The notes beneath the pieces were generated by a model, which ran no database searches, was not told where the DNA came from, and worked only from the letters and a program-made list of their open reading frames with translations. From Macrostomum lignano (lineage: Eukaryota), in NCBI GenBank assembly GCA_002269645.1, contig NIVC01001901.1, positions 62,001 to 126,000 of the forward strand: 64,000 nt of DNA, written 5' to 3'. The position numbers and the translations under genes are program-made. Positions 9,649 through 63,069 of the stretch are shown piece by piece (position 1 is the stretch's first letter; each line of letters starts with the position of its first letter).

Positions 9649-12600
9649 ATGCAATCCCGAGGCAACTTCTTAATCGACGGCGAATGTTACGACGACGACG
9701 ATGACGACTATGACGATGAAGATGACTACGACGACGACGATGATGACGCAATCATTGACCCGTCTGCTGGCGTCGAGGCTGGACAGCGGCGTCGGCTGCA
9801 GCAACGATTCCGGGCTTCGCTGCCGCATCCTGGCGAGGCGACGGCGGCAGCAGCAATGACGGTCGGCAGTAGCGGCTGGGGCCAGCGGCAGCCGCAGCAG
9901 CGAAGTTCCCTGGCTCAGCTGCAGCTCCAAGAGGCCATCAGTAGCCGTCAGCTTGGCCAGAAGCTGGACGAACTGCTTGACCGTCTGGCTTCGACGGCTG
10001 ACTTTGACATCAATGCGCCGTTGAAGAACGGCTGGACGCCTCTAATGCTGGCTGCCGAACGGTGCAACATCGAGATGGTCGCCGCCTTGATTGACAAGGG
10101 TGCACGCGCTGACCGTGTCTCCGCCGACGGCACCACCAGCCTAATGGCCGCCTGCGGCAGCGGCAGTCGGCACAGCGACGAATCTGCGGTTCTAGAAATG
10201 ATTCAATTGCTGATGGACTGCGGAGCTAAGGAGACTATTAATACCGTGTCGGCTAGGTGAGTTCTCATTAGAGATTAGTGCCTTCACCTTTCTCCACTAG
10301 TTCAATAAATGTCGCTAATTTTTCACCAAGTTTAATAAGTGGATAATTCGTCATCAATCAGACAGGGCACGGCTCTGCACCTGGCTGCTCGATTCAATTA
10401 TCCTCGGGTTGTCGCTCGCCTCCTGGCCGATGGCGCCGGGGTCGATACGCTGTCGGCCGGATCGGACGGGCGCACACCGCTAATGGAAGCCGCTGCCAGA
10501 GGCAATCTCCGCTCCGTTGAGGCCCTGCTGTCCGGCGGCGCCAAGCCCGACCGTCGGGATCGTCGGGGCCACACAGCGGCTGAGTTAGCAGCCAACGCCG
10601 GCTATCCACGGGTGGCCCGCCTCATCGACAGTCCCGTAGGCGAGCTGACCGTCTCTCTGGCGGGCGACGGCGACGGCGAGGGATGTATCGGTGAAGTTGC
10701 CCCCAGCGTCGGCTCGACCAGCGCCGACGATGAATCCGCCAAACTGGACGACCTGTCCAGCTTTTTCTACGGCATCGGTGAGCAATCCTTTTATGGTCAT
10801 TCCATCCTAACCTAAAATCGGCCTCTCCTGACATCTCATGCCTTGACATCATCCTGTATTCACCGCCACCCTCTCCTGACACATTCCTGTCCTGTCGTGA
10901 CGTCACCCTCTCCTAATGTCACTGTCATGACGTCACCCTCTCCTAATGTCACTGTCATGACGTCACCCTCTCCTAATGTCACTGTCATGACGTCACCCTC
11001 TCCTAATGTCACTGTCATGACGTCACCCTATCCTAATGTCACTTTCATGACGTCACCCTCTCCTAATGTCACTGTCATGACGTCACCCTCTCCTAATGTC
11101 ACTGTCATGACATCACCCTCTCCTAATGTCACTGTCATGACGTCACCCGGTCATTTGCATTTGTGTATTTTAATCATGCTGCTTATTGGCGATAGATATA
11201 TGGAATAAATAAAAAAGGTATAAAAAGCGAAAGATAGACTGAATCGACAAACTCGGATACTTATTAATACAGTAAAATACTAACACGACTTAACGTCAGA
11301 TAAAACGGCAAGACATAACTTACGAACAAATGACTTACTGATCTATTATACCTTGACGCTTTTAAAAACCTCATTAAACAGGGTTCGAAACCCTGCACGG
11401 ACTCCAAACAACCTTATGAGCTTAGACTACTACATGTAGCATTGAGGTTTATACTAGTTCAATAGTAAACTTCAAATATCACTTTGTGAGTCTTCTTTGC
11501 CATGGTTTCTGGCCTTGCTGCAATCTTAACCATACCCAGTACGAAGACTGAGTGAAGTCTTTTCTTCACGTATTTTTTAAGACTTATGGACAATATTTTG
11601 GTCATTTACCTACTTCTCGGTCATTTTGGAAGTAAAGTACCCTTCACAAGTGCTCAACATAAAGAATCAAAGTAGAGGTGTGACGGTCAAGAATGAAGTG
11701 CTCATTATTAGTCCTACCTTGATAATAACACATAAAATACGCTGTCAGTCAGTTCTTAAAGAAAACAGCGTCTCAGAGTGCGCCTCGGGGTCAGGACCGA
11801 ACCAAATATGAGACGCCAGCGTCAGCCAGCAGGCAGTCAACGAAGCACCAAGTCCGCACCTTTACGACTTGGCACGGATGATGTGCTGGACCAGCTGGAG
11901 TTACCACAACGGTTCGTTTGGACAAACCAGGCCGACGCAGCGATACAGTGCCGCGTTTGTGACTTGCTCGTCGCCTATCTAGAAGGCAGCCGGCAGTGAG
12001 GTAGGTCCTCGGGCTGCAGGACCGGCCTCACAGAGCGAAAGGAAGCGCAGGCAGGCCCGCAGCGACGCCGCGAATCCTCGCACACGTCGGGAACCAGACC
12101 GCCAATGAAGTCAAACAGCTGACATCGCGGAAGCTCCGTCGCCTCAGAACTCTGTGCAAAACCGCAGTCTTGGCCATCCGAGTGTTTATCACGTTCCAGC
12201 CTCTACCGCAATTAACCGGTTCGATTCTAACTAAAATCCATCTACTCGTACATTTAGTACAATGCTACAATATTGTCTTCAAGCGGAACTTTTTAGAGCG
12301 ATATTTCTGCCACGAGAATACTGTTTTATACAGTACTCCAAATGCAACTCCAATTACTAAGCTTGACTACCAGTGGTACAAGGAATTGTTTAGAACAGTT
12401 TACAGTACCAAAGTTAATAAATTAAGCCGAATTGAAAATCCATACAAGTGTATAATTTAAAGCAAACTATTAGTCTTTGTTCGTGCTTTTGTCGCTTTTC
12501 GTATTTTTTCACGCCAGGAACTAACAAATAATATTGCAACCAGACCGTGTGGTGTGAGTCTCATCCGCTGCCAGGATTGTTAATACAAAGTATACTGAAA

Positions 12601-15261
12601 AGTTAGCAGATCAAAGTAACAAATAATGTTAGCGCAAATGCAAACCAACATTTGCTTCCAGGTGGCTAATCGTCACCTGGAAACTATAAAAATATATCAG
12701 CTGGTCTCAAGTAGGAACTCAACCTGACGCATTGGCACTAAACTCACATAATAATCTTCTCATTCAACTTTTTCCTCTCAAAACAAAAACTGATTGCGGC
12801 TCTGAACCAATAATCGATTGCTTTTCTCAAGCACGCAAGCCCTCACGACCTCCCACCGTCACGCCGAGTCCCCCGCTGCTCGAGCATCCGCCGGAGTGAC
12901 TCAAGCCTGGCTTGAGCAGCGGCACCGGAGCACAGTCTCCAGTCACCGGCCGCAACGTCTGCCTCCACCGGCACCACGTAGTACTTGCTTGAGCCCTTCT
13001 CCACCGCGAACTCGCGAGACAGATCCTCCGGCTGCAGCTGGCAGCCGAGCTTCTGCAGTCGGAGCACCTTCTCAACGCTGAGCCCTTCGAAGGCTACAGT
13101 CGAGTCGACGTCCAGAAAGGCCAGACCATCGCCGCTGTCCTTCTCCAGCAGCAGCAGGTCCTCGCCGCAGACACGGAAGAAATGCACGCACAGGTGCAGG
13201 CGCCGAACAGATTTTGCGCAGATCAGCTCAGCCTGTCTGGAGGCGTAGCGACGACGAACTGGATCGAACCACAGGAACCGAATGACATTAGACTGCTGTT
13301 GAGCTTCTTGACTGCGAACCTCTGGGCCTGGGTCCTTCCTATTAAATGATCCAATGGCAGGTTTGGTGTAGCTTTTTAGATTACCATTTTCAAAGCAGGT
13401 TTTTTGAACTGTGCTTTGAAAACTGCTCGGGTTTGATTCCAGTCAATACGAGCGTACACGGTGGATCATGAGTAGAACCGCATGTCCTGATGAGAAAGAA
13501 ACCACCGGTGATGTACAAGGCGGAGGATAATTCAACCCACGAGTCAAGACTGATAAATAGTCGTACCTTGAAAAAGAATTCTGTACTCTATAAAAACTGA
13601 AGATTGCAGCTAATGAGCTTTAAACATAAATACAGTTCGATTATCAACTATATTTCAATAGTGAGCCCTGTTAATTGCATGTGACCGATGGGGTTAGCCA
13701 TTCTGAAAAGTTGATGTATTCTGCAACTGAGCTAGTTTCAAATGAACCATGAACAATTGTATGAACTGTCACTGTCATGGGACAGCACGCGGCTACAGCT
13801 AGAAGGAGAAGATGGCTGTTGGGCTATTTTGAAACTTCTTTGAACTGCATGCGCTACAAACTCTTCTTTAAAAAGATGAACTCTAAATTTTCTATGTATA
13901 ATTTTAAAAATACCTAGCTAAAGCCGTCTTCTTCTTCTGCTGCTGTTGTTGTTGTTGCTGCTCCTGCTGCTGCTGCTGCTTCTGTGTGGCGTTTCGACTC
14001 GCCAGCTGAGCATTAGCCTGCCTCATTGGCAGCGACTTCAACGTCTCCGAAGTTGTCGCCGCGTCGTCCATCTGGCAGGCACCCGCGGCGGCGGATTCTC
14101 CGTGGCATCGACAGACACAGCAGGGCGGAGTACCGGTTTCCACCGGCTTCATTGGAGGCGGCTGCTGCGTCAGCGAGTCCCCGCGGTTGCTGCTGTTGCA
14201 GGGAACTTGACGACGTCGTCTGCCTCCGGTGTTGGTCGCGGTGTCGGCGGCAGGTCCGTTCGCCACTTCGCTGCCGGACAGCAGAGTTGCCAGGCCGGCC
14301 AGCTGCTGGATTGTGCTGTCCAGCCGGTCCTTGAACTCCTTCAGGCTCTCCTCATTCTGTTCAGTGGTCAACTGAGTCCTGGTGGGCTCCCTCGAGCTGC
14401 TCATTGAGGTGTTCGTGGAGCTGGATTGCTGGCCATAGCTCATGGCCGACTTCACTTGCCGGTCTTTTTTCGTAGTGCCAGCTGTCTTGTGCATTCTTGG
14501 TTTCCTACAAAAAAACCGCCAAAATAAAGTTCAGATAGCCGCGCCTTTAAGTTTTATAGTTATTTCGTTAGTGTGTGACACTTCTAAAGATCTGGCTATG
14601 CAGTTTGGTGCATAGATATAAGGCAGTGACTACAATAAATGCCGCGCAAAAAATTGCTAGGTAATTTCAAAGTTTAAATGGCATCAAAAACTGACATAAA
14701 AAACTATTATAAGACATTTAGATTTAGGCAGACAGATTGAAACTCCCGATTTAGGGCGTATTCTAAGCGCACTCTTTAGGAAGTGGCTGAGTAGTTAGCT
14801 TATATGGTACTTGCTTATGCGTACTTAAAAGAGGATTGAAAGTAGTTGCCTAGTAGAATCACGGGATTTCAGAGAATATGGATCAAGAACTTTCAATCAT
14901 TAACAGAGACAATCTCATGAGATTCCTCTCTTTGTTTGATGCCACACCTTTGATATTGAAATCAGGCTAGTAGTTAACCCTAAAACTTCGCTCTGTTTTC
15001 TTTAGGCTATCCAGAAGTGGCAAACCAATTTCGCGCTCACTGTTTGACTTTTGTTGACCTGCTGACGACGACAGACTCGGCGCTTGAAAAAATCGGCGTC
15101 CGACAAGTCGGCGTTCGTCGGCGCATTTTGGAGGCCGTGCGGCAGCTGCACAGGCGGCCCTGGCGGGATTCCAGCATGCCGCAGCTGGCTACTGGGAGAC
15201 CGCCTGCCGCTGCTGACTATCTGGCGATACTGGCCAATCTGCACAGGTCTGTGTCTGTCTG

Positions 15262-15296
<35 letters not shown>

Positions 15297-15449
15297 GTCT
15301 GTCTGTCTGTGTCTGTCTGTCTGCCTGCCTGTCTGTCTGCTTGTCTGTCTGTCTGTTTGCCCGTCTGTCTGCCCGTCTGTCTGTCTGTCTGTCTGTCTGT
15401 CTGTGTCTGTCTGTCTGTCTGTCTGTCTTAGTGTCTGTCTGTCTGTCTG

Positions 15450-16394: not shown

Positions 16395-16817
16395 TCGTTG
16401 GGAGTTTTGGTTGCACTGATCGAAGAACTTGTGTACGAAATTGAAGCTACTTTTAAGCTTAGCGATAGTATAAAGTTAGTTTAGTAATGCATGTTTGTTT
16501 GCTATTATGGTTACTCGTGTAATAACTGACTTAACTGGGCTCTTATTCATATTAGTCCTCATTAAACCAATAAAGTCTAGTATAATAACCCTTTCAATGC
16601 ATGCATTTGTGCTTGTACTCAAAAGCGCAGTTCCGGTGTTTTTTATTTATTAAAAGCCATTTGTTTTTTCTGTGTGCGCTATTTGTTTTTTTTCTAATTT
16701 CTTAAGTTTGAATGAAAATATAAAAATACTGCTGCAAAGTGCTTCAAGTTTGTAATGTACTCGTGACGTCTCTAATTTAACTCAATATGACTTCAGTTTA
16801 AGGCAAGATTTAGTTCC

Positions 16818-17354
16818 TGTTTCAGACAGGATTTAGGTACTGTTTCAGACAGGATTTAGGTACTGTTTCAGACAGGATTTAGGTACTGTTTCAGACAGGA
16901 TTTAGGTACTGTTTCAGACAGGATTTAGGTACTGTTTCAGACAGGATTTAGGTACTGTTTCAGACAGGATTTAGGTACTGTTTCAGACAGGATTTAGGTA
17001 CTGTTTCAGACAGGATTTAGGTACTGTTTCAGACAGGATTTAGGTACTGTTTCAGACAGGATTTAGGTACTGTTTCAGACAGGATTTAGGTACTGTTTCA
17101 GACAGGATTTAGGTACTGTTTCAGACAGGATTTAGGTACTGTTTCAGACAGGATTTAGGTACTGTTTCAGACAGGATTTAGGTACTGTTTCAGACAGGAT
17201 TTAGGTACTGTTTCAGACAGGATTTAGGTACTGTTTCAGACAGGATTTAGGTACTGTTTCAGACAGGATTTAGGTACTGTTTCAGACAAGATTTAGGTAC
17301 TGTTTCAGACAGGATTTAGGTACTATTTTAGACAGGATTTAGGTACTGTTTCAG
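16818..17354. repeat. 23-bp minisatellite (TACTGTTTCAGACAGGATTTAGG), about 23 nearly identical copies
   Basis: Read directly; lies between ASZ1 and the PRA1-family gene. Confidence 0.95.
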
Positions 17355-17656: not shown

Positions 17657-18208
17657 ATGCGCCTAGCCAAGCTTCGATCCCTAGATGAATTTCTCGGCCG
17701 CTCGTCGCGTTTCCAGCTGCCGGACCTGCAGCATCAGGAGCGCTGGAGCAACCGGGTGCAGCAAAACCTGCTGTACTATCAGACTAACTACATGGCCGTG
17801 TTCTGCCTCAGCTTCATCATCTTCCTACTGGTTGATCCGGCTAGCGTACTATGCGGATGCGGCATTGTCGGGGCCTGTCTGGCGGCCGGACTCTGGCTAG
17901 CAAATGGCGGCGCTGAACGGCGCCTACAATTTCGCGACGCCGTCTCGCGTCGGCCGGCGCTGACCGTCGCGCTTAGCCTGGCCTGCGCTCTGGTGCTGCT
18001 CTACTGCCTGCGCCCCGCTGCCATCTTCCTGCTGGCCGCCCTGCTGCCTCTGTTCGCCTGTCTGGTGCACGCCTCGCTCCGACTGCGCAGCGTGTCCAGC
18101 AAGGTGTCGCATAAGCTGCGCGGCCTTCGCTCTCCCGAAGATGTCACCCCGATGGAATTCGTGCTCGGCTGGCTGACGGCTGTAGAGGCCGAGGGGCTCG
18201 ATCTGTGA
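17657..18208 (+). CDS. ARL6IP5: Intronless PRA1-family protein (ARL6IP5/PRAF2-like), 183 aa
   Basis: MRLAKLRSLDEF...RWSNRVQQNLLYYQTNY, VHASLRLRS and TPMEFVL are PRA1/JWA hallmarks, with two long hydrophobic segments. True start taken as ATG 17657 rather than TTG 17639. Confidence 0.9.
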   Translation: MRLAKLRSLDEFLGRSSRFQLPDLQHQERWSNRVQQNLLYYQTNYMAVFCLSFIIFLLVDPASVLCGCGIVGACLAAGLWLANGGAERRLQFRDAVSRRPALTVALSLACALVLLYCLRPAAIFLLAALLPLFACLVHASLRLRSVSSKVSHKLRGLRSPEDVTPMEFVLGWLTAVEAEGLDL

Positions 18209-19771
18209 TTTAGTGACCAAGCACTAATTAGATATCGAGGTATTATCATAATCAAAACAACATTCAAATTTACTCTCCGCCCCCCCCCTTTTTCGTTTGA
18301 CGGTCCCGCGTAGTTTCTATAAGGTGGCTCGTAAGGTGGCTAATGCAGTAATGCAGCAAGACGCAATTTAAACCCGAGATTGGGCTTCAGATCCTGGTGT
18401 CCCGTTGAAAACGATACTGAGAAAAGAATCCCTCAGAGCCTCAGAATCGTTTCAGAGTCGCAGACAACAAAAGGCCTCGAATTGACTCTTAGGCGACTCT
18501 TTGACGAATTTTTGGCGACTTGTACACTTGTACCGTGGCATCTCGTCGTTTTAAAGTCGTCTAGAGTCTCTTCTTTCCTTTTTTACCTGTGTTACCTTCT
18601 TGGCCGGGGTGCCGTTGTCATAGGAGTGTCTCGTGGTTAAAACCAATCCAATTAAACCAGTTTTAGTGGTTGTATTAGAGACTTCATAGACCCTTACCTA
18701 GTTTTTTGTAACCTAACCTTTTCCCATTCGTCAATATGCTGAGTACTTTTTTTCTTTGTTTAATACTATAAGTATGCAGTCTACACATTAGAACATGTAT
18801 TTTAGCAGTACATTACACATATATCAAGTGAAAAAAATCTATTGTATGCGGACATTCTGTACAAAGTTATTATTATTGATTAGTATTTTTGATATTACAT
18901 TGATAGTTAGCTATTTCTGCACTGTTCGCGGTAAATATGTCAAAATGGTTGTTGTGTGCGCTAACTTAATTAAGTAATTTCAAAAGAGTTTGAATTGTTT
19001 TTAGTAGCCATTGTACGTTGCGCTGAAAGGTATTAGTTAGAAGATTATAATAATGTTGGCAGTTAGTAACTTGGCGTTGAGAGTATGCCGATGTTCGATA
19101 AGTACTTTCTTATATGTAAAGTGAGTGCACTGTGTACTTAAATGCACCTATTAAAGTAGACCGCAAAACTTAAAAGTATCATTTTTACTGCTGCTAGCTG
19201 AAATTTTATATTACTCTGTTTCTAATCAGATTAATTTGCTTGAAGAGAGCACGATTTTTTCTAATCCAGCTATGATGCTTCATTTGTCTTTATTACATTT
19301 ATCTGGATTTATAGTCATATACAGTCAATTGGCTGGCTTGTTTATCAACTTTTTCATTTATAATTAACATATAATTATATTTGTAAACTCAGCTTTAAGC
19401 TCTACAAGACTTAATTTCTTTTCATCTGATAATTCACAGTAATTTCAACTCTTGAAAGAAAGGCGTTTTCGATTCGTTCATTTCGTTAATTTTCTATCGA
19501 ACCGTGTGGAAGCTATGCACTTTAAAAATGCAGAGAAAAAGGCCTGATTATGAATTGTCTATGGCAGAGGGCAGAGAGCTCGCAGATGCCAGAACGATTT
19601 GCCTGCACACCGCTCAAGCCTTTCCTTTATTCTCTTAGTAACAGCTTGTGGAAATAAGACGCCTGAGTTTCATTGTCAAACAACTTCAATTGCCATCTCT
19701 TTAGTAAGCCTTGCAGCAGCTTTTTTGATCGATTTTGCATCACAACTTGTTGCACAAGTCCAAGCTCGAGC

Positions 19772-21874
19772 ATGACCATGGATAGCGAGCACGGTCGCGA
19801 GCTGCAGAAGCAGCTAGCCGTTCACAAGAAGGTGGTCGTGGATGAGACCGTGGAGCGAATGGAAACAATTAGGCCGCCTATATACTATGACATGCCTCGA
19901 CCAGACCAATTTCTGTCCGCTGACGTCAGCCAATCGTTGCGTGATTTGATCAGCTGCCCGGAGGGCTTCTTTGGCGTCGACCATCCAAATACGGCCTGGC
20001 TGATTAACCTGCTCAAGGACACGTCTGAGTGGCGGCTGCAGAAATGCCTAGTATCGCTGCGGACCCGGCCTCTGTTTGACAACACCAAATACTATCAACT
20101 GATTGATCGGCCCACCTATTATTGGGGCAACTCCGCTAGCATGGAGAAGCCGTTGTTTAAATCCAACTCGATGCTTTATTTAAACGCATTCGGCGTTGCG
20201 CTCTATTTGAAAGTTGAAGTCGGCTGTCACAAGCTGGCGGCGGCCAAGTCGGGCAAGAACTATCTGGTCAGCGCCATTGTACCTCAGTATGCGTCCTTCG
20301 TGCACGACTGCGACTACGACTTGGTGCGCTTCAATTACGACTTCCTGTGCATGAAGCGGGAGTATTTCGACGGTTTGCACTTTCTGGCCATGACCGGCTG
20401 GAATCCGTCCAGCACCACGTTGTTCACATACAGACGCAAGTACTACCAGTTCAGTGTGCCGTTCACGGATTGGGTGGACGTTCTGCGCTACCTACTGGAA
20501 CGGAAACCTTCGTTGAACGTTGCTAGACTAGTGGACAAAATGTATCGCCTGCAGTACGTCGTGAATCCGGCGTACAACTTTAACATGATGTTTATGAAAG
20601 AGATCGGCAAAGTAATGATGGAGGCCTTCGAGCTAAAGGAGCTGACGCGTTACAACTTCAACAATCCGACCAAACTTGGTAACTATGCGGGCCGCAAGGT
20701 GCTTAAGAACAAGGAAGTGCCAGTGCCGGACGAGTATGCCACTGTGTTTTCCGACAAAGAAGGTAAACCAAAGAACCCACTGAGGCCCGTTGTGCCCAAC
20801 ATCATGTCTTACGTGCGTCGGTTGCTATCCTTTCAGTACTACTTTGATGGCAAGCACTTGTTTGCTCTGCCGCAGATCATCCGGGCTATTCTATGCTTCA
20901 AGTATCACGATTTTTTTGTCGTCTCGCAGACGGTAAAAAATTCGTGCGAAACGGACTCGACCGGTGTGCACCGGGTGTACATTGACCCGCTGATCTTTCA
21001 GATCAACTACTTTCTTAATTTGAAGTCGGATGGAATGTACCTGCGCCACAAGCAGTGGTCCAGCCACTCGGCATCCGCTGACACGGATGGCATCACTGAG
21101 GAGGAGCGGACCTGGTTCTATCGATTCGACACTTTCAACTGCCTTAGTCTGCTTGCCGGCTTGCTGCAAAACTGTCTCATCAAGAACGTGTCAGATGTCA
21201 TTGTTGAGAACGTCTGTGATCTTATTGTTCACGTGTTGGTAGATTCTGAACTCATCGAGCCCTTCTTTCGCTATTCGTATTACGATACGTACTTTGGTCT
21301 GACTAGTGTTATTAATTGTGTGCCAAACCTCATGTCCAAAACTGTGCTGCGTCTGTTAAAAAAGGCACCAATCACGCTGGTGAGCAACTTTGAGGTTACT
21401 CAACTAGCCCGCATGTTTACCATGAGCTTCTGGAAAATCAGCGCCCAGATTGACTGCGTGACGGTGCCTAAGACCATCGACGAGATGGCCACCTTCCTGC
21501 TGTGCAAGCGGCGTCGAGTCAGCATGAAGGTTGAAGGCCCAGCCACGGGCGAGGCGATGTCGGGCGCCAGCTCCATTGGTGCCGCCGGTGGAATCACCAT
21601 GTTTGTGCGCAACTACGACGACATGACGGAAATCAGCGCCGGTGACGAGAACGCCGAGCAGCCAGCCTCAGAGACCACCAAGAAACAGGACGAGGAGAGG
21701 AAGCACGTTTACGAGTACAAGCACATGGAGATAGACGCCCGCTACAGTTCCGTATTCCCTGTGTACTTCGAGGGTCTTAACAAAGTTCAGGTGAACTTGG
21801 ACGAAAACAAGATGTTCGATGATTGCATATTCGAGTCTTACTCGCAGCACATGTTGGCCCATTTGAGGAAATGA
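19772..21874 (+). CDS. Intronless ORF of about 700 aa, function unknown
   Basis: 2.1-kb stop-free non-repetitive frame; ATGACCATGG start context; no family motif recognised. Confidence 0.85.
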   Translation: MTMDSEHGRELQKQLAVHKKVVVDETVERMETIRPPIYYDMPRPDQFLSADVSQSLRDLISCPEGFFGVDHPNTAWLINLLKDTSEWRLQKCLVSLRTRPLFDNTKYYQLIDRPTYYWGNSASMEKPLFKSNSMLYLNAFGVALYLKVEVGCHKLAAAKSGKNYLVSAIVPQYASFVHDCDYDLVRFNYDFLCMKREYFDGLHFLAMTGWNPSSTTLFTYRRKYYQFSVPFTDWVDVLRYLLERKPSLNVARLVDKMYRLQYVVNPAYNFNMMFMKEIGKVMMEAFELKELTRYNFNNPTKLGNYAGRKVLKNKEVPVPDEYATVFSDKEGKPKNPLRPVVPNIMSYVRRLLSFQYYFDGKHLFALPQIIRAILCFKYHDFFVVSQTVKNSCETDSTGVHRVYIDPLIFQINYFLNLKSDGMYLRHKQWSSHSASADTDGITEEERTWFYRFDTFNCLSLLAGLLQNCLIKNVSDVIVENVCDLIVHVLVDSELIEPFFRYSYYDTYFGLTSVINCVPNLMSKTVLRLLKKAPITLVSNFEVTQLARMFTMSFWKISAQIDCVTVPKTIDEMATFLLCKRRRVSMKVEGPATGEAMSGASSIGAAGGITMFVRNYDDMTEISAGDENAEQPASETTKKQDEERKHVYEYKHMEIDARYSSVFPVYFEGLNKVQVNLDENKMFDDCIFESYSQHMLAHLRK

Positions 21875-22891: not shown

Positions 22892-25288
22892 ATGTTGCGC
22901 GCAAGTTTTGGTCTTTTAAATCTTCAGAAGGGACTCTTTCTGGTAAGCGAAACGTAAGGTGACAGATATAAAAAGATAACCAAGTGACTAGAATTAAATA
23001 GTTTTTGTTTTCCAGTTCAGCAATTCTTATGCTTGGTAATTCTTGACTAGGCCTATTTGTTCTCATTCCAGTTACGACTAGATAACTTAATATTTATATT
23101 ATAATGCCATGGGAAACAATACAGAAATAGTAAATTTCTAACAACCCTAAAATATATAAAACAATGCATTTTAACTTAAGCAACAAAAGTTAACAATGTT
23201 TTGTTATGCTTTGTTTTGCTATTTGCATTTTAATTTATTTGCAGTTTTGCACCTGTAAACCAAAAATATAGGCTTAACAAAAAAACAACACCTAACTAGG
23301 AGCTAAAAAGTATAAAGATTTGTATTCTTATATAATAGACAATAATATAGTAATAAGCTATCTAGGACAAGAAAAAGGCTAGGCCCATAATAATAAAAAA
23401 AGTAATAAAGTAATAAAAAATATTTAGGAGTATTTTATTTTTAGCTTAAATATATATTTTAAATATACTTTATATAATATATGACAAATCAAAAAAATAT
23501 TAATATAATTATAACAATTGCTTTAGAATAAGAAAGATAAAAGCATTAAGCAACAAATAACAGCAAGTATTATTTTGTATAAATTGAATGATATAAAATC
23601 TCAATTTAATTTGACATTTCTAAAAAAACAAAAAATCTTTTATACTTATATGACTTACTCCTATTTTTTTAAATATGATTTTTTGCATTGTAATACTAAT
23701 ACTAATTACATTTTTAACAAAATCTTTTTCCTGAGATACTAATTTAGCTTGCTAGTCAATTATGCTTTCTGGCAGAAGCCAATGCAAGCTCAAAAATTTA
23801 CCAAAATTTTGCTTTTCTTTGCTAAAAAATCTCTAAGAAAACTAGCCACCTTTTGAACTATTATGTGCAATACTTGATCTAATTGTATAATAGATAAAAT
23901 AATCCTAACTTTGCATAACCTCCAATTTAAGCCATCATATAAAATCATAGGAAATCTGCATCTCTAACTCTGAACTTGCACTTACAAATATTTACTAAAC
24001 AATATAGATTTTTACATTGCTTTGGCTAAATAGGCTTTTTTGCCTAAGCCACTTAATACTACTACTACTACTACTACCACTACTAGTCTACAGTCTTCAA
24101 GTTTACAAGTACAAGTTGTGTACCTTTGAAAACCAGTTATCCTACAAGTCACCCCAGAAAATTTCTGCTAAACCCTGCAAAATAAAGCCTTACCCTAAAA
24201 AGGGGAGCTTTCCAAAAACACTGTTATATGCAAAGAATCTTGCTTCTACTTAATTATCCTATTAACCAACTATAGTAAACAAGTCAGAGTAAATAGATGA
24301 TTGATCCAAAATATTTCCTAATTGATGGGGATAAACTGGGAGTTCTGCAAATATGAAATCTGCACCCGAACAAGTGCATAGTCTATTTATACTAATTAAA
24401 TAATGTTCATTCCCATCTGATAACCCAAACAGTCTGGAAGGAGTCGCCTAGCCAGCAGTCTGGTGATAGTTGAGCATGACAATGCCAAACTGAACCCAGC
24501 CACTCTGCATGCGGTTACTGCCGCAGCCAAGCTCTCTGGCAGTGGAGGCGACGTCACCTGTCTTGTTGCTGGGCACGGATGCTCACCTGTGGCTAAGGCT
24601 GCTGCTCAGGTAAGAATTCTACAATTCTATCATTCTACACTAATTATTATAATATACCTTTCTGAAGTTCAAAAGTATTTTTCGCGTGGAGCCAGCCTGA
24701 GGAGAATAACATATCTTTCTAAGAAACGTACTTTCCCCTCCTCCTCCCAGATTTTCTCATATCCCTGAGAATTTCTCACAGTTGTGGAAAATGCCTCCTC
24801 CTCCCCCACGGCAGGTCGCCGGAGTCAAACGCGTCCTGCTGGCCGACTCCGATGCATTCAAAGGTTTCCTGCCCGAAGCCCTCGCCCCCCTCATCGTGGC
24901 CTGCCAGTCCAAGCTGCAGTTCAGCCACATTGTCAGCTCGGCCACTGCGCTCGGCAAGTCGCTGCTGCCGCGCGTCGCCGCTAAATTGGACGTCGCCGCC
25001 GTCTCCGACGTTATCGACGTCAAATCTGAGGACACCTTTGTCCGGCCTGTGTACGCTGGCAACGCTCTGCAGACCGTCAAGTCGCTCGACAAGGTCAAGT
25101 GCATCACCGTTCGGGGCACCGCCTTTGAAGCTGCCGCAGAAACTGGCGGCTCGGCCGGCGAGGAGGCCGCGCCCGGTGCCGACGGGGTGACCAACTCCGT
25201 CAGTAAGTTTATTGGACAGGTAAGTTACAGCTGACTGACTGACTGACTGACTGACTGACTGACTGACTGACTTGAGTGAGTGGGTGAT

Positions 25289-25320
<32 letters not shown>

Positions 25321-26260
25321 TGACTGACTGACTGACTTGAGTGAGTGGGTGATTGACTGACTGACTGACTGACTGGCTGACTGGCTGACTGACTGACTGA
25401 CTGGCTGACTGACTGACTGACTGACTGACTGACTGACTGACTGACTGACTGACTGACTGACTGACTGACTGACTGACTGACTGACTGACTGACTGACTTG
25501 AGTGAGTGGGTGATTGACTGACTGACTGACTGACTGACTGACTGACTGACTTGAGTGAGTGGGTGATTGATTGACTGACTGACTGACTGACTGACTGACT
25601 GACTGACTGACTTGAGTGAGTGGGTGATTGACTGACTGACTGACTGACTGACTGACTGACTGACCCAACTCACAGCACACAGCGTTATTAAAGCACTAGA
25701 AATTCATTTTAGTTTGAAGCCATAGGTTTTCTCTGTGCTTTTTTATATGCTTCATCTTAAAAAACGCACTTTTAAGGCTGCATTCAATTGTTGGACAACC
25801 GCATTAAGGCTGTAAGTATTTTACACCTGACAACCCATCACCCGAGAGCTCTCTCCCTCCCCACCCTCAGGAGCTGAGCAAGAGCGACCGACCTGAGCTG
25901 TCCAGCGCCAAGGTGGTTGTGTCCGGCGGCCGTGGCCTGAAGTCCGGCGACAACTTCCAGCTGCTGTACGAGCTCGCCGGCAAGATGAACGCCGCCGTTG
26001 GCGCTAGCCGGGCCGCTGTGGACGCCGGCTTCGTGCCGAATGACATGCAGATCGGCCAGACCGGCAAGATCGTCGCCCCGGACCTGTACATCGCAGTTGG
26101 CATCTCGGGCGCGATCCAGCACCTGGCCGGCATGAAGGACAGCAAAGTGATTGTCGCTATTAACAAAGACCCCGAGGCGCCAATATTTCAGGTGGCCGAC
26201 TACGGCTTGGTTGCCGACCTGTTCAAAGCCGTGCCCGAGATGACCAAACTGCTCAACTGA
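22892..26260 (+). CDS. ETFA: Electron transfer flavoprotein subunit alpha (about 340 aa). Exons 22892-22942, 24433-24609, 24815-25219, 25871-26260
   Basis: [61 protein letters not shown] and [12 protein letters not shown]. All introns are phase 0 GT-AG. Exon 1 ([17 protein letters not shown]|GTAAGC) is inferred as the mitochondrial presequence and is less certain. Confidence 0.95.
25230..25663. repeat. (GACT)n microsatellite with interspersed TGAGTGAGTGGGTGAT blocks, ETFA intron 3
   Basis: Read directly. Confidence 0.95.
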
Positions 26261-26644: not shown

Positions 26645-29600
26645 ACAGTATCATACCTAGAATCACTGCCAGTGTCATACCTATAATCACTCCCAGTATC
26701 ATACCTAGAATCACTCCCAGTATCATACCTAGAATCACTGCCAGTGTCATACCTATAATCACTCCCAGTATCATACCTAGAATCACTCCCAGTATCATAC
26801 CTAGAATCACTCCCAGTGTCATACCTAGAATCACTCCCAGTATCATACCTAGAATCACTGCCAGTATCATACCTAAAATCACTGCCTGTATAACACCTAA
26901 AATCACTGCCAGTATCATACCTAAAATCACTGCCAGTATCATACCTAAAATCACTGCCAGTATCATACCTAGAATCACTCCCAGTATCATACCTAGAATC
27001 ACTGCCAGTATCATACCTAAAATCACTCCCTGTATAACACCTAAAATCACTGCCAGTATCATACCTAAAATCACTGCCAGTATCATACCTAAAATCACTG
27101 CCAGTATCATACCTAAAATCACTGCCAGTATCATACCTAAAATCACTGCCAGTATCATACCTAAAATCACTCCCTGTATAACACCTAAAATCACTGCCAG
27201 TATCATACCTAAAATCACTGCCAGTATCATACCTAAAATCACTGCCAGTATCATACCTAAAATCACTGCCAGTATCATACCTAAAATCACTGCCAGTATC
27301 ATACCTAGAATCACTCCCAGTATCATACCTAGAATCACTCCCAGTATCATACCTAGAATCACTCCCAGTATCATACCTAGAATCACTCCCAGTATCATAC
27401 CTAGAATCACTGCCAGTATCATACCTAAAATCACTGCCAGTATCATACCTAAAATCACTGCCAGTATCATACCTAAAATCACTGCCAGTATCATACCTAA
27501 AATCACTGCCAGTATCATACTTAAAATCACTGCCAGTATCATACCTAGAATCACTGCCAGTATCATACCTAGAATCACTCCCAGTATCATACCTAAAATC
27601 ACTCCCTGTATAACACCTAAAATCACTGCCAGTATCATACCTAAAATCACTGCCAGTATCATACCTAAAATCACTGCCAGTATCATACCTAAAATCACTG
27701 CCAGTATCATACCTAAAATCACTCCCTGTATAACACCTAAAATCACTGCCAGTATCATACCTAAAATCACTGCCAGTATCATACCTAAAATCACTGCCAG
27801 TATCATACCTAAAATCACTGCCAGTATCATACCTAAAATCACTGCCAGTATCATACCTAGAATCACTCCCAGTATCATACCTAGAATCACTCCCAGTATC
27901 ATACCTAGAATCACTCCCAGTATCATACCTAGAATCACTCCCAGTATCATACCTAGAATCACTGCCAGTATCATACCTAAAATCACTCTCTGTATAACAC
28001 CTAAAATCACTGCCAGTATCATACCTAAAATCACTCCCAGTATAATACCTAAAATCACTGCCAGTATCATACCTAAAATCACTGCCAGTATCATACCTAA
28101 AATCACTGCCAGTATCATACCTAAAATCACTGCCAGTATCATACTTAAAATCACTGCCAGTATCATACCTAGAATCACTCCCAGTATCATACCTAGAATC
28201 ACTCCCAGTATCATACCTAAAATCACTGCCAGTATCATACCTAGAATCACTGCCAGTATCATACCTAAAATCACTGCCAGTATCATACCTAGAATCGCTC
28301 CCAGTATCATACCTAGAATCATTGCCAGTATCATACCTAAAATCACTCCCAGTATCATACCTAGAATCACTCCCAGTATCATACCTAGAATCACTCCCAG
28401 TATCATACCTAGAATCACTGCCAGTATCATACCTAAAATCACTGCCAGTATCATACCTAGAATCACTCCCAGTATCATACCTAGAATCACTGCCAGTATC
28501 ATACCTAAAATCACTCCCAGTATCATACCTAAAATCACTCCCAGTATCATACCCAGAATCACCCCCAGTATAATACCTAAAATCACTGCCAGTATCATAC
28601 CTAAAATCACTCCCAGTATCATACCCAGAATCACCCCCAGTATAATACCTAAAATCACTGCCAGTATCATACCTAAAATCACTCCCAGTATTATACCTAA
28701 AATCACTCCCAGTATCATACCTAGAATCACTCCCAGTATCATACCTAAAATCACTCCCAGTATCATACCTAGAATCACTCCCAGTATCATACCTAGAATC
28801 ACTCCCAGTATCATACCTAAAATCACTCCCAGTATCATACCTAAAATCACTCCCAGTATCATACCCAGAATCACCCCCAGTATAATACCTAAAATCACTG
28901 CCAGTATCATACCTAAAATCACTCCCAGTATTATACCTAAAATCACTCCCAGTATCATACCTAGAATCACTCCCAGTATCATACCTAAAATCACTCCCAG
29001 TATCATACCTAAAATCACTCCCAGTATCATACCTAAAATCACTACCAGTATCATACCTAGAATCACTCCCAGTATCATACCTAGAATCACTCCCAGTATC
29101 ATACCTAGAATCACTCCCAGTATCATACCTAGAATCACTGCCAGTATCATACCTAAAATCACTCCCAGTATCATACCTAAAATCACTCCCAGTATCATAC
29201 CCAGAATCACCCCCAGTATAATACCTAAAATCACTGCCAGTATCATACCTAAAATCACCCCCAGTATCATACCTAGAATCACTCCCAGTATCATACCTAG
29301 AATCACTCCCAGTATCATACCTAAAATCACCCCCAGTATCATACCTAGAATCACTCCCAGTATCATACCTAGAATCACCCCCAGTATCATACCTAGAATC
29401 ACTCCCAGTATCATACCTAAAATCACTCCCAGTATCATACCTAGAATCACTCCCAGTATCATACCTAGAATCACTCCCAGTATCATACCTAAAATCACCC
29501 CCAGTATCATACCTAGAATCACTGCCAGTATCATACCTAGAATCACTCCCAGTATCATACCTAGAATCACTCCCAGTATCATACCTAAAATCACTCCCAG

Positions 29601-29665
29601 TATCATACCTAAAATCACCCCCAGTATCATACCTAAAATCACCCTGTATAACACCTAAAATCACC
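26645..29665. repeat. 24-bp minisatellite (CAGTATCATACCTA[G/A]AATCACT[C/G]C), about 125 copies, 3 kb
   Basis: Constant 24-bp period with recurring variant blocks. Confidence 0.95.
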
Positions 29666-30221
29666 CCAGTATCATATATTTCAGCTGGCATGCTTACAGC
29701 ACTATGATACAAATGTTTAACTTTAGTGAATCATGCCGCTATCACTATTTCAGCCAATCAAGAAACAATGAGCCTGGACTATGGTAGAAAGCGCAGACTG
29801 AATCGGTTGAACAGTCAAGAGGGGTGAGAGTTTGCGCATTGCTATAGTGAGCTGACTTAGTAGTCCATAATACTTGATGTTGTTAATGTAGCTGTGCTTA
29901 GTACACATAATTTATTTAGTTTATACCTGAGCACCATAACCCGTGTGACCTCTGCCAGCTTATATGTATGCTTTGATGGTTTTGGCACCGTAACTACTTT
30001 ACATTCTCGTTAATTAAATGACCTATACTTTCAGTTGCACTGCGCCCGCATGTCTTGCTACATGTAGATGCTATTGTCGTCGCCACCCGTTTGTTGTTGT
30101 GTATTGCTTTGTAAGTATAGCTTTTGTGTGCGTTTTTTATTGCTTTTTTTCTAACAGACTGACCTGTTCACTTTTTATTAAAACAATTCTAATGCTTAAG
30201 TAGAATTTGCGAAGCCTAAAT

Positions 30222-31497
30222 AATCTCAGTGTCAGGGGAGCTGTGCCCCCCATCTCAGTGTCAGGGGAGCTGTGCCCCCCATCTCAGTGTCAGGGGAGCT
30301 GTGCCCCCCCCCCCCCCAATCTCAGTGTCAGGGGAGCTGTGCCCCCCATCTCAGTGTGTCAGGGGAGCTGTGCCCCCCATCTCAGTGTGTCAGGGGAGCT
30401 GTGCCCCCCATCTCAGTGTGTCAGGGGAGCTGTGCCCCCCATCTCAGTGTGTCAGGGGAGCTGTGCCCCCCATCTCAGTGTCAGGGGAGCTGTGCCCCCC
30501 ATCTCAGTGTCAGGGGAGCTGTGCCCCCCATCTCAGTGTCAGGGGAGCTGTGCCCCCCATCTCAGTGTCAGGGGAGCTGTGCCCCCCATCTCAGTGTCAG
30601 GGGAGCTGTGCCCCCCAATCTCAGTGTCAGAGGAGCTGTGCCCCCCATCTCAGTGTCAGGGGAGCTGTGCCCCCCATCTCAGTGTGTCAGGGGAGCTGTG
30701 CCCCCCATCTCAGTGTCAATGGAGCTGTGCCCCCCATCTCAGTGGCAGGGGAGCTGTGCCCCCCATCTCAGTGTCAGGGGAGCTGTGCCCCCCATCTCAG
30801 TGTCAGGGGAGCTGTGCGTCCCATCTCAGTATCAGGGGAGCTGTGCCCCCATCTCAGTCTCAGGCGGGCTGTGCCCCCATCTCAGTGTCAGGGGAGCTGT
30901 GCCCCCCATCTCAGTGTGTCAGGGGAGCTGTGCCCCCCCATCTCAGTGTCAGGGGAGCTGTGCCCCCCATCTCAGTGGCAGGGGAGCTGTGCCCCCCATC
31001 TCAGTGTCAGGGGAGCTGTGCCCCCCATCTCAGTGTCAGGGGAGCTGTGCCCCCCATCTCAGTATCAGGGGAGCTGTGCCCCCCATCTCAGTGTCAGGGG
31101 AGCTGTGCCCCCCATCTCAGTGTGTCAGGGGAGCTGTGCCTCCCATCTCAGTGTCAGGGGAGCTGTGCCCCCCATCTCAGTGTGTCAGGGGAGCTGTGCC
31201 CCCCATCTCAGTGTCAGGGGAGCTGTGCCCCCCATCTCAGTGTCAGGGGAGCTGTGCCCCCCATCTCAGTGTCAGGGGAGCTGTGCCCCCCATCTCAGTG
31301 TCAGGGGAGCTGTGCCCCCCATCTCAGTGTGTCAGGGGAGCTGTGCCCCCCATCTCAGTGTCAGGGGAGCTGTGCCCCCCATCTCAGTGTGTCAGGGGAG
31401 CTGTGCCCCCCATCTCAGTGTGTCAGGGGAGCTGTGCCCCCCAATCTCAGTGTCAGGGGAGCTGTGCCCCCCATCTCAGTGTCAATGGAGCTGTGCC
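30222..31497. repeat. 29/31-bp minisatellite (ATCTCAGTGTCAGGGGAGCTGTGCCCCCC)
   Basis: Read directly. May lie in a 5'-UTR intron of hexokinase (donor-like GTAAGT at 30111, acceptor at 31671). Confidence 0.95.
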
Positions 31498-36000: not shown

Positions 36001-37354
36001 GCGGTTCAGGGGCGATTCTTGGGGAGCAAGCGGTTCAGGGGTGATTCTTGGGGAACAAGCGGTTCAGGGGCGATTCTTGGGGAGCAAGCGGTTCAGGGGC
36101 GATTTTTGGCGAACAAGCGGTTCAGGGGCGATTTTTGGGGAGCAAGCGGTTCAGGGGCGATTCTTGGGGATCAAGCGGTTCAGGGGAGATTTTTTAGCAG
36201 CAAAGATTCTTTGGGATCAACCCGCAGACATTCGAGAAGCTGGTGTCCGGCATGTATCTGGGCGAGCTGGTTCGCTTGGCCATCCAGCAGCTGGTATCTG
36301 ACGGTGTGCTATTCGACGGCCGCATGCCCGAGGCGCTGCGCCAGCCCATGAGCTTCCACACCAAATACCTGAGCGAGGTGGAGCGGGATCCGCCCAGGCA
36401 CTACTATAGCACAGATAGCCTGCTCACTGTGGACCTCGGCCTGCAGCTGGTCCGCCCGCTGGACATGATGACTGTGCGCTGCCTGTGCGAGGCCGTGTCC
36501 ACCCGGTCTGCCTACCTGGTTGCCACCGGCATCTCCTGCCTGTTGAAGCGAATCGGCTCCCCCGATGACGTCACCGTCGGCATTGACGGCTCGCTGTTTA
36601 AATTTCATCCGCACTTTCCACAGCGGATGATCGATAAGATTAACGAGCTGCACCCGGATGCTAAGGTGAGGGGCTGGCGCTGGAGTGCAGCTTTGATTGG
36701 CAGGTGGGATTGGAGATTTGATTGGCAGGTGGGGATCGGAGATTTGATTGGCAGGTGGGGATTGGAGATTTGATTGGCAGGTGGGATTGGAGATTTGATT
36801 GGCAGGTGGGGATTGGAGATTTGATTGGCAGGTGGGGATTGGAGATTTGATTTGCAGGTGCGGATTGGAGATTTGATTGGCAGGTAGGGATTGGAGATTT
36901 GATTGGCAGGTGGGGATTGGAGATTTGATTGGCAGGTGGGGATTGGAGATTTGATTGGCAGGTGGGGATTGGAGATTTGATTGGCAGGTGGGGATTGGAG
37001 ATTTGATTGGCAGGTGGGGATTGGAGATTTGATTGGCAGGTAGGGATTGGAGATTTGATTGGCAGGTGGGGATTGGAGATTTGATTGGCAGGTGGGGATC
37101 GGAGATTTGATTGGCAGGTGGGGATTGGAGATTTGATTGGCAGGTGGGGATTGGAGCTTTGATTAGATCTGAACCAGTCAGTTAGAATAAGGTAGTCATA
37201 TATCAATTAATCAATGCAGGATTTCGGTTTGGTTCGGCAGCTTTTAGCAGCCTACTATGAGTAGTATATAATTATTTTTTCTTTGCAGTTCCTGCTGCGC
37301 CTATCGGAGGACGGCAGCGGCAAAGGTGCGGCGGCCATTGCCGCCATGGCCTGA
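31688..37354 (+). CDS. HK: Single-domain (~50 kDa) hexokinase, about 479 aa. Exons 31688-31735, 32901-33476, 34482-34793, 36228-36665, 37289-37354
   Basis: LALDLGGTNYRV, LGFTFSFPC, WTKG, VNDTVGTL, IVGTGTNAAY, INTEWGNFG, FEKLVSGMYLGELVR, VGIDGSLFKFHP and SEDGSGKGAA. All introns are phase 0 GT-AG. Exon 1 (MHVSDSRKKIPALPEK|GTAAGT) is less certain. Confidence 0.95.
31862..32875. repeat. 22-bp minisatellite ([A/C]ATCTAGCCAATATCTATCAGA), HK intron 1
   Basis: Units mostly alternate A/C, giving a 44-bp dimer. Confidence 0.95.
33525..34265. repeat. 21-bp minisatellite (AATTAATATCCTTCAGGCTGC), HK intron 2
   Basis: Read directly. Confidence 0.95.
34817..36200. repeat. 29-30-bp minisatellite (GAGCAAGCGGTTCAGGGGCGATTTTTGGG), HK intron 3
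   Basis: Read directly. Confidence 0.95.
36694..37165. repeat. 26-bp minisatellite (GATTGGCAGGTGGGGATTGGAGATTT), HK intron 4
   Basis: Read directly. Confidence 0.95.

Positions 37355-39939: not shown

Positions 39940-63069
<23,130 letters not shown>

What the first reader, a model, noticed from the sequence alone, without database searches (positions are those of the whole stretch)
19772..21874. Intronless 700-aa unassigned ORF with non-host-like composition between housekeeping genes
Seen: 2.1 kb open, no introns, no poly-A/Q tracts, rich in F/Y/M/N/K/V, and roughly 50% GC against roughly 60-65% in sampled HK exon sequence. It looks globular along most of its length, and I recognise no family motif. 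Inference: a domesticated viral or horizontally acquired gene, or an ancient lineage-specific enzyme or structural protein, possibly co-transcribed with PRA1 and ETFA. No TIRs, LTRs or TSDs seen around it.
Basis: partly seen in the sequence, partly recalled or inferred. Interest (0 to 1): 0.7.

Follow-up and report, generated by a model that had tools for sequence, protein, structure and literature searches.

The report
Flatworm-only orphan gene family member
The 700-codon intronless ORF is a real, strongly conserved gene of the flatworm Macrostomum lignano; it belongs to a multigene family so far found only in flatworm-type sources, has no recognisable domain or fold, and shows no sign of viral or foreign origin.

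Summary
The ORF is real: window 19772-21874, + strand, 700 aa, single-exon CDS, between PRA1 and ETFA. The window is Macrostomum lignano.

Total GC is indeed low (0.51 against about 0.60 in neighbouring exons). GC3 is host-like (0.68-0.69 against 0.67-0.70), so the difference comes from amino-acid composition, not foreign codon usage.

No Pfam, PDB-sequence, PHROG or IMG/VR match was found. An AlphaFold model (pLDDT 69, pTM 0.73) has no Foldseek match in PDB or in viral structures.

An exhaustive HMMER search found 19 other hits. About 17 are true relatives and two look like fused gene models.
- At least 9 are M. lignano paralogue groups, each in 2-4 near-identical copies. Two examined paralogues have spliceosomal introns.
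- Others come from the monogenean Protopolystoma xenopodis, two unidentified sequencing runs and a Tara Oceans contig.
- A published table lists a planarian homologue for one paralogue.

dN/dS is 0.04-0.07.

Published tables class one paralogue as a stringent stem-cell (neoblast) gene and another as testis-specific. The target itself has no direct expression data.

Verdict: an ancient, flatworm-restricted host gene family of unknown biochemistry. The viral/HGT reading is not supported. Interest is modest.

The parts
19772..21874 (+). Single-exon CDS of the orphan gene (700 aa plus stop); protein P0001
   Evidence: ORF list. Identical protein annotated on M. lignano contigs NIVC01000575.1 and NIVC01002125.1. 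dN/dS 0.04-0.07.
19943..20539 (+). Family-defining N-terminal domain (residues 58-256). Motifs: PEGFFGxDHPNTxWL, YYQxxDRP, LYLNxFGxALYLK, PQYAxFVHD, KREY, GWNP, YRRKYYQ, FTDWVD, RKP
   Evidence: Shared by all relatives (query 65-260). Alignments A2 and A3. An HMM built from M. lignano sequences only hits Protopolystoma at 3e-20 and the Tara contig at 3e-23. The model is alpha/beta with pLDDT 80-94.
20648..20782 (+). Linker (residues 293-337). Low model confidence but highly conserved between the A and B paralogues (94% identity over residues 301-350)
20789..21526 (+). Mainly helical middle/C-terminal domain (residues 340-585), with conserved SxxRRxL, DxxNxxxLL and YYDTYFGL motifs. Ends in the basic motif KRRRVSMK
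   Evidence: Model pLDDT mostly 70-94. Alignment A2 has nearly invariant R350 and D453.
21527..21871 (+). C-terminal tail (residues 586-700). Gly/Ser-rich, then acidic. Predicted disordered, yet among the best conserved parts (88-92% identity A vs B; dN/dS 0.02)
   Evidence: Alignable in the subfamily members P0003 and P0004.
19711..19716 (+). TTGCAG, the only match to the published trans-splice acceptor motif [T/C]TNCAG in the 400 nt upstream of the ATG. A candidate only
   Evidence: Motif scan. Motif taken from PMC8629364.
22261..22266 (+). AATAAA, the only such hexamer between the stop codon and ETFA. A candidate poly(A) signal, giving a 3' UTR of about 390 nt
17657..18208 (+). Upstream neighbour: PRA1-family gene, also a single-exon CDS
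   Evidence: PF03208, 1.7e-29. Annotated 183-aa product on L004.
24782..26257 (+). Downstream neighbour: the verified ETFA exons. A likely first exon with an ATG lies near 22892
   Evidence: PF01012, 1.5e-32. ETF and ETF_alpha on the annotated product. ORF list. Sequence.

Best explanation
Shown:
- This is an ordinary nuclear gene of Macrostomum lignano.
- It belongs to an old multigene family that all evidence so far restricts to flatworms and unidentified flatworm-like samples.
- It encodes a soluble protein with no signal peptide and no transmembrane segment.
- The layout is a short N-terminal helix, a family-defining alpha/beta domain of about 200 aa, a conserved linker, a helical domain of about 250 aa, and a conserved but disordered Gly/Ser-rich then acidic tail.
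- The gene is under strong purifying selection.
- Its low GC reflects an F/Y/N/K/M-rich protein, not foreign codon usage.

Inferred:
- The intronless A lineage (this gene) and B lineage (Mlig012070) arose by an ancient dispersed duplication, possibly retroposition, from an intron-containing family member.
- One paralogue is a stringent neoblast transcript and another is testis-specific. No catalytic signature or known fold is detectable. The most likely role is therefore a non-enzymatic scaffold or adaptor acting through protein-protein contacts in proliferating stem or germ cells. The folded domains would provide the binding surfaces. The conserved tail and the RRRVS motif would provide short linear or phospho-regulated motifs.
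- The functional part is a guess, with about 0.3 confidence. The overall confidence of 0.6 blends about 0.9 for the shown part (host gene, flatworm-restricted family, purifying selection) with about 0.3 for the functional part.
For: Identity and host:
- The protein is 100% identical to an annotated M. lignano protein on two contigs with the same PRA1-ORF-ETFA order. The window is 98-98.6% identical to them.

Family:
- HMMER against 1.84e9 representatives gives 20 hits.
- Every hit that carries a name is M. lignano (groups Mlig012070, 004562, 021828, 014962, 011744, 022898, 032244, 027160, 009405, each in 2-4 near-identical copies) or Protopolystoma xenopodis.
- The paralogue Mlig032244.g1 is classed 'flatworms' with a Schmidtea homologue (E 1e-20) in PMC5816591 Suppl. 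Table 2.

Host nature:
- GC3 is 0.68-0.69, like the neighbours.
- Paralogues have 2-3 and 4 introns, and one spans 17 kb for 2062 nt of exon.
- No flanking repeats were found.

Selection:
- Nei-Gojobori omega is 0.069 against paralogue B and 0.038 against the 88%-identical P0043.
- Near-identical copies differ only synonymously.

Architecture:
- AF2 with 18 sequences gives pLDDT 69.4 and pTM 0.73.
- The maximum 19-residue hydropathy is 1.42, below the usual 1.6 threshold for a transmembrane segment.

Expression of relatives:
- Mlig032244.g1 is 'Neoblast, stringent', with irradiation logFC -2.0, -2.6 and -3.0.
- The Mlig021828 model is 'Testes-specific'.
- Transcript-like 2.2-2.9 kb contigs exist for P0043, P0003, P0013 and P0017.
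Against: - No direct expression or localisation data exist for this gene itself. The published tables I could read were truncated in storage or did not list it.
- Expression of paralogues that are 20-30% identical is weak evidence for the target's own role.
- Nearly invariant D112, D233, R350 and D453 could equally mark an active site, so 'non-enzymatic' is unproven.
- dS is close to saturation (1.8-2.0), so omega values are approximate, although pN is far below pS.
- Restriction to flatworms rests on one search with a narrow two-sequence profile. More distant relatives in other phyla could have been missed.
- The organisms behind the Logan runs and the Tara contig are unidentified.
Confidence: 0.6

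Rival explanations
1. Domesticated viral (for example Polinton or giant-virus) gene, or a horizontally acquired gene.
For: Intronless. Overall GC is lower than the neighbouring exons. No cellular family is recognised.
Against: - GC3 equals the host neighbours.
- The family has intron-containing paralogues and is spread across distant flatworm lineages.
- No relative was found in IMG/VR, though that scan used exact peptide patterns and reaches only close relatives.
- No PHROG hit.
- Best BFVD Foldseek E-value is 0.48.
- No TIR, LTR or direct repeats flank the gene.
- The neighbouring PRA1 CDS is also single-exon.
- A capture before flatworms diversified cannot be formally excluded.
Confidence: 0.05
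2. Retrogene. The intronless A/B lineage arose by reverse transcription of a spliced mRNA from an intron-bearing family member, followed by a second dispersed duplication. This refines the best explanation rather than excluding it.
For: - A (this gene) and B (Mlig012070) have single-exon CDSs.
- The closest intron-bearing relatives are Mlig004562, with at least 2 introns, and Mlig021828, spread over 17 kb.
- The A and B loci share no synteny within +/-10 kb.
- The average M. lignano gene has 4-5 introns (PMC5816591 Suppl. Table 1).
Against: - No poly(A) remnant or target-site duplication is visible. None would be expected to survive at dS of about 2.
- Intron loss by other routes, or intron gain in the paralogues, is not excluded.
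- UTR introns were not examined.
Confidence: 0.4
3. A novel enzyme. The conserved N-domain is a catalytic domain of a so far undescribed fold, with the nearly invariant acidic and basic residues forming the active site.
For: - D112, D233, R350 and D453 are at least 90% conserved across 18 very divergent members. D112 is invariant in the N-domain alignment (D55 in A3).
- The N-domain is a compact alpha/beta domain.
Against: - No match to any enzyme family in Pfam or in the PDB, by sequence or by Foldseek.
- Conserved charged residues also occur in structural cores and interfaces.
- Much of the conservation lies in predicted disordered segments.
Confidence: 0.15
4. A highly degenerate ankyrin-like or other helical-repeat scaffold. 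I raised this from motifs such as LYLTPLGLAIYLK....LL and RRExF....LL.AGW.P.
For: - The motifs look like the TPLHLA....LL..GA.p pattern. This is my reading, recalled from general knowledge.
- The model shows recurring hairpin plus two short helices.
- Ankyrin proteins appear far down the Foldseek lists (E 2.7-4.4).
Against: - No Pfam Ank hit in any of 18 members, even at E <= 5.
- hhalign of the N-domain profile against the window's own ankyrin exon gives probability 0.2%.
- No internal repeat signal between putative units (all probabilities 3.2% or lower).
- No significant Foldseek hit.
Confidence: 0.07
5. A transposable-element protein or a domesticated transposase.
For: Multi-copy family. 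One UniRef member is named 'Integrase catalytic domain-containing protein'.
Against: - That name and the other UniRef names (Mab-21, MPN, Bromo, TPR, Sm and so on) have no Pfam support.
- Copies come in sets of 2-4 at syntenic loci, as expected from polyploidy.
- No terminal repeats.
- Introns are present in paralogues.
- omega is 0.04-0.07.
Confidence: 0.03

Closest known systems
M. lignano paralogue Mlig012070 (P0002, PAA63608.1 / PAA87401.1 / PAA90676.1, 'hypothetical protein')
   Same: 78% amino-acid identity over the full length, 701 aa, also a single-exon CDS, same domain layout.
   Different: Different genomic neighbourhood with no PRA1 or ETFA. GC3 is 0.82 against 0.69. dS is about 2, so the duplication long predates the recent genome doubling.
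Subfamily relatives Mlig004562 (P0004/P0022), Mlig021828 (P0005/P0025) and the Logan protein P0003
   Same: Alignable end to end at 30-37% identity, including the conserved C-terminal tail.
   Different: Mlig004562 and Mlig021828 contain introns. Mlig021828 is classed testis-specific in PMC12896417 Table S10. The target has no such data.
Mlig032244 group (P0011/P0034) and its relatives Mlig011744, Mlig022898 and Mlig009405
   Same: They share the N-terminal domain of about 200 aa (28-29% identity) and several downstream motifs.
   Different: Longer (742-877 aa), with low-complexity C-terminal halves and 4 introns. Mlig032244.g1 is a published 'stringent neoblast', trans-spliced, flatworm-specific transcript with a Schmidtea homologue (PMC5816591).
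Protopolystoma xenopodis VEL15930.1 (P0021, 'unnamed protein product')
   Same: Carries the N-domain (E 3e-20 against an HMM built from M. lignano sequences only). This places the family's origin before the split of Macrostomorpha and Neodermata.
   Different: 22-23% identity. The rest of the protein is hardly alignable.
Mlig-sperm1 family (another flatworm-specific M. lignano family, PMC5816591)
   Same: The same kind of thing: a taxon-restricted multigene family expressed in reproductive or proliferating tissue.
   Different: Unrelated gene IDs. None of our family's IDs is in that paper's Suppl. Table 4. Sequences were not compared directly.

Membership tests
Unnamed flatworm-restricted family (Mlig012070 / 004562 / 032244 / Protopolystoma VEL15930 group) | N-terminal domain of about 200 aa carrying the motifs HPNTxWL, YFQxxDxP, LYLTxLGxAxYLK, PQYA...GD, RRE, GWxP, FxDWxD and RP | tested here: met
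   Cross-lineage HMM E-values of 1e-20 to 1e-60.
Unnamed flatworm-restricted family | Downstream helical domain with SxxRRxL and DxxNxxxLL motifs | tested here: met
   Nearly invariant R350 and D453 in alignment A2. Helical in the model.
Ankyrin repeat proteins (Pfam Ank clan) | Significant match to Ank profiles, or internal repeats of about 33 residues | tested here: not met
   No Pfam hit in 18 members. hhalign probability 0.2% against the window's ankyrin exon. No internal repeats.
Mab-21 / cGAS-like nucleotidyltransferases (a UniRef name on P0004) | Match to PF03281 or an NTase-fold core | tested here: not met
   No Pfam hit for P0004. No Foldseek PDB hit at E < 0.38.
Viral, Polinton or phage proteins | Sequence or fold similarity to a viral protein | tested here: not met
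   IMG/VR scan negative, though it reaches close relatives only. PHROGs gave none. BFVD best E 0.48 with TM <= 0.26.
Viral, Polinton or phage proteins | Foreign codon usage or flanking element structure | tested here: not met
   GC3 0.68-0.69 against 0.67-0.70 in the neighbours. No flanking repeats.
Processed retrogene | Intronless copy of an intron-containing parent at a new locus | tested here: met
Processed retrogene | Poly(A) remnant and target-site duplication | tested here: not met
   None seen. At dS of about 2 they would not be expected to survive, so their absence carries little weight.
SL trans-spliced operon (PRA1 - ORF - ETFA) | Same-strand neighbours with a repeat-adjusted intergenic distance below 1 kb and SL addition on the downstream gene (criteria of PMC8629364) | tested here: inconclusive
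   The genes are on the same strand. The CDS-to-CDS gaps are 1.56 kb and about 1.0 kb and include UTRs. One acceptor-like motif lies 55 nt upstream of the ATG. No SL-read data are available here.
Secreted or membrane protein | Signal peptide or hydrophobic transmembrane segment | tested here: not met
   Hydrophilic N-terminus. Maximum Kyte-Doolittle 19-residue mean is 1.42.

The most novel reading that the evidence does not exclude
The family defines a previously undescribed protein fold, or pair of domains, that arose at the base of Platyhelminthes. It then diversified into at least 9 paralogue groups whose members act in neoblasts and germ cells. That would make it a lineage-specific component of the flatworm stem-cell and germline machinery, with this gene as its intronless, most constrained branch.
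Probability: 0.25. Interest if true: 0.6.

Novelty: new member of a known kind. Interest (0 to 1): 0.35.

Why it matters
Flatworms are studied for their pluripotent stem cells and include major parasites. Taxon-restricted genes are candidates both for what makes neoblasts special and for parasite-specific markers. This report does three things:
- It connects a set of scattered 'hypothetical proteins' into one family with a definable conserved domain.
- It shows the family reaches from Macrostomum to a monogenean, and probably to planarians.
- It links two of its members to neoblast and testis expression in published tables.

For the scan itself, the main value is negative. An intronless, compositionally odd ORF between housekeeping genes turned out to be a normal host gene, not a viral capture.

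Tried and rejected
1. Word-indexed homologue searches with alignments A2 and A3 returned almost nothing. Only the exhaustive HMMER search was productive.
2. The AF2 run with a 2-sequence alignment was useless (pLDDT 30).
3. Profile searches of the PDB with A3 and A2 gave only chance-level hits: IL-18 receptor at E 0.15 and eL19 at E 0.93.
4. The ankyrin-repeat idea was rejected.
5. UniRef names on family members (Mab-21, MPN, Bromo, Integrase, TPR, Fungal_trans, Sm, ANK_REP_REGION, ORF12) were checked against Pfam and found unsupported. P0007, P0018 and P0019 look like fused gene models carrying a neighbour's domain.
The single-protein scan was negative.
7. Literature searches for the gene IDs and SRR accessions in main texts found nothing. 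Supplement searches of PMC7336406 and PMC5946080 found nothing. The key table of PMC5816591 is truncated in storage, so the target's own row, if any, could not be read.
8. Rfam found nothing in 16-26 kb.
Full report
**1. The observation**

The + strand of the window has an open frame from 19673 to 21874. Its first ATG is at 19772, giving 700 codons plus a stop. By chance, such a run is expected about 3e-10 times in 64 kb.

The protein is 100% identical to a protein annotated on two contigs of the Macrostomum lignano assembly GCA_002269645.1. There the gene is called as exactly this single-exon CDS. It is flanked by a PRA1-family gene upstream and ETFA downstream on the same strand (Pfam). The window is 98-98.6% identical to those contigs, so it is M. 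lignano, from another assembly or haplotype.

The compositional remarks hold. GC is 0.51, against 0.60-0.64 in neighbouring exons. The protein is richer in F, Y, M and N than the neighbours; K and V are high but not above all of them. No repeats bracket the gene, and Rfam finds nothing nearby.

**2. Composition is not foreign**

The GC deficit lies in codon positions 1 and 2 (0.48 and 0.35). GC3 is 0.68-0.69. That matches PRA1 (0.70), the ETFA exon (0.70) and the ankyrin exons (0.67). Four-fold-degenerate GC3 is 0.68 against 0.73-0.77. The low GC therefore follows from the amino-acid content, not from non-host codon usage.

**3. What it is related to**

Curated libraries give nothing:
- Pfam, no hit.
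- PDB sequences, no hit.
- PHROGs, no hit.
- Pfam on all 18 family members at E <= 5, nothing consistent.
- PDB with family profiles, chance-level hits only.

The word-indexed search found only the protein itself and a 78%-identical M. lignano paralogue, Mlig012070.

The exhaustive HMMER search of 1.84e9 cluster representatives found 20 proteins. Three are full-length relatives (P0003, P0004, P0005). About fourteen others share only the region of query residues 65-260.

Cluster look-ups show where they come from. Every named member is an M. lignano 'hypothetical protein' or the monogenean Protopolystoma xenopodis protein VEL15930.1.
- The M. lignano groups are Mlig004562, 021828, 014962, 011744, 022898, 032244, 027160 and 009405.
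- Each group is present in 2-4 near-identical copies, as expected in this polyploid genome.

The remaining members come from unidentified sources:
- Run SRR30276804/15, with GC3 of about 0.83, like Macrostomum.
- Run SRR33002330, with GC3 of 0.43-0.52, so a different organism.
- One Tara Oceans metagenome contig.

The odd UniRef names on some members (Mab-21, MPN, Bromo, Integrase and others) have no Pfam support.

**4. A host gene family, not a captured element**

- The paralogue Mlig004562 has at least two introns and Mlig032244 has four.
- The Mlig021828 model has 2062 nt of exon spread over 17 kb.
- Copy numbers are 2-3 per paralogue, at syntenic loci.
- There are no TIRs, LTRs or direct repeats.
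- The IMG/VR pattern scan was negative. It reaches only close relatives.
- Foldseek against BFVD gave nothing better than E 0.48.

The A locus (this gene) and the B locus (Mlig012070) share no neighbours within +/-10 kb. Both have single-exon coding sequences. An ancient retroposition from an intron-bearing relative is therefore plausible, but its hallmarks are no longer visible.

**5. Selection**

- Nei-Gojobori estimates are dN 0.137, dS about 2.0 and omega 0.069 against paralogue B.
- Against the 88%-identical protein P0043 from run SRR30276804 they are dN 0.067, dS about 1.8 and omega 0.038.
- In 100-codon windows against P0043, omega falls from about 0.10 over the first 100 codons to about 0.02 in the C-terminal half.
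- The 1-6 nucleotide differences among near-identical genomic copies are all synonymous.
- dS is near saturation, so the ratios are approximate. The contrast pN 0.06-0.12 against pS 0.68-0.70 is robust.

**6. Anatomy of the protein**

With the 18-sequence alignment, AlphaFold2 gives pLDDT 69.4 and pTM 0.73. With two sequences it gave pLDDT 30.

| Residues | Feature | Model confidence |
|---|---|---|
| 6-32 | N-terminal helix | moderate to low |
| 60-290 | alpha/beta domain that carries the family motifs | pLDDT mostly 73-94 |
| 293-337 | linker, 94% identical between A and B over 301-350 | low |
| 340-585 | mainly helical domain ending in KRRRVSMK | mostly 70-94 |
| 586-700 | Gly/Ser-rich then acidic tail, 88-92% identical between A and B | low |

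There is no signal peptide or transmembrane-grade hydrophobic segment.

D112, D233, R350 and D453 are at least 90% conserved across the family.

Foldseek finds no significant match in the PDB (best E 0.38, TM <= 0.13 on the query) or in BFVD.

My own idea that the N-domain is a degenerate ankyrin array failed every test.

**7. Function**

Nothing is shown directly for this gene. Two published tables bear on its relatives:
- Mlig032244.g1 is 'Neoblast, stringent'. It is strongly depleted after irradiation (logFC -2.0, -2.6, -3.0), enriched in S/G2/M cells and trans-spliced. Its conservation class is 'flatworms', with a Schmidtea homologue at E 1e-20 (PMC5816591 Suppl. Table 2).
- The gene model that contains Mlig021828 is 'Testes-specific' (PMC12896417 Table S10).

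The 2.2-2.9 kb contigs with short untranslated ends from RNA-like runs suggest that orthologues and paralogues are transcribed.

From this I infer, at about 0.3 confidence, a role in proliferating stem or germ cells as a non-enzymatic scaffold or adaptor. An enzymatic role is the main functional rival.

**8. Co-transcription**

All three genes are on the + strand.
- The gap from the PRA1 stop to this ATG is 1.56 kb.
- The gap from this stop to the likely ETFA start is about 1.0 kb.
- A single TTGCAG acceptor-like motif lies 55 nt upstream of the ATG.
- A single AATAAA lies 390 nt after the stop.

The published operon criterion is under 1 kb of repeat-adjusted intergenic distance plus SL addition (PMC8629364). 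Without read data the question stays open.

**9. Comparison with what is known, and verdict**

The gene is an annotated 'hypothetical protein', and one paralogue sits unremarked in a supplementary table. The family as such has not been described in any source I could search.

In kind it is a taxon-restricted multigene family like others reported in flatworms. It is therefore a new member of a known kind, with possibly novel folds. The viral/HGT reading is not supported and the lineage-specific reading is. Interest is modest (0.35).

The most novel reading that remains open is a flatworm-born fold family acting in the neoblast and germline machinery. I give it a probability of about 0.25.

Noticed in passing
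window 2519-63999 (for example 26646-29676, 30223-31497, 34813-36191, 50526-52047, 60800-62751): The window is packed with long minisatellite arrays. About 29 arrays have periods of 4-59 nt and up to 126 copies. One is a 3-kb array of a 24-nt unit inside or next to ETFA. Many create long spurious ORFs on several frames.
   Followed up: partly
window 16796-17354; L005 5726-7457: A 23-nt tandem array (24 copies) lies just upstream of PRA1. It is expanded in the second genomic copy (L005), which explains part of the length difference between the two homeologous loci.
   Followed up: no
L011 5637-6963 and 8001-12128: The neoblast paralogue Mlig032244 sits directly downstream of a deoxynucleoside kinase (dNK/TK2-like) gene. 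In PMC5816591 that gene has the same transcript-cluster base ID (MligTCv3c-18137) and is also 'Neoblast, stringent'. This may be an operon-like pair.
   Followed up: no
P0004, P0009, P0015, P0029, P0033, P0035, P0041, P0042 (UniRef A0A1I8... entries): UniRef/UniProt names of M. lignano WormBase-ParaSite-derived entries in this family (Mab-21, ANK_REP_REGION, Sm, MPN, Integrase catalytic, Bromo, TPR_REGION, Fungal_trans) are mutually inconsistent. Pfam backs none of them. Treat such names as unreliable.
   Followed up: yes
window 19772-21874 versus L001 10001-12106 and L012 37-2145: The target has markedly lower GC3 (0.69) than its paralogue B (0.82) and the 88%-identical P0043 (0.83-0.84). It sits in an AT-rich intergenic setting (flanks at 0.24-0.44 GC). 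This suggests a locus-specific drift in base composition.
   Followed up: partly
window 10339-10812 and 14984-15300 region; L004 1-5238: Upstream of PRA1 lies an ankyrin-repeat plus SAM-domain gene (ANKS-like). On the opposite strand inside it is a gene for a 373-406 aa protein with no Pfam hit. It was not examined.
   Followed up: no
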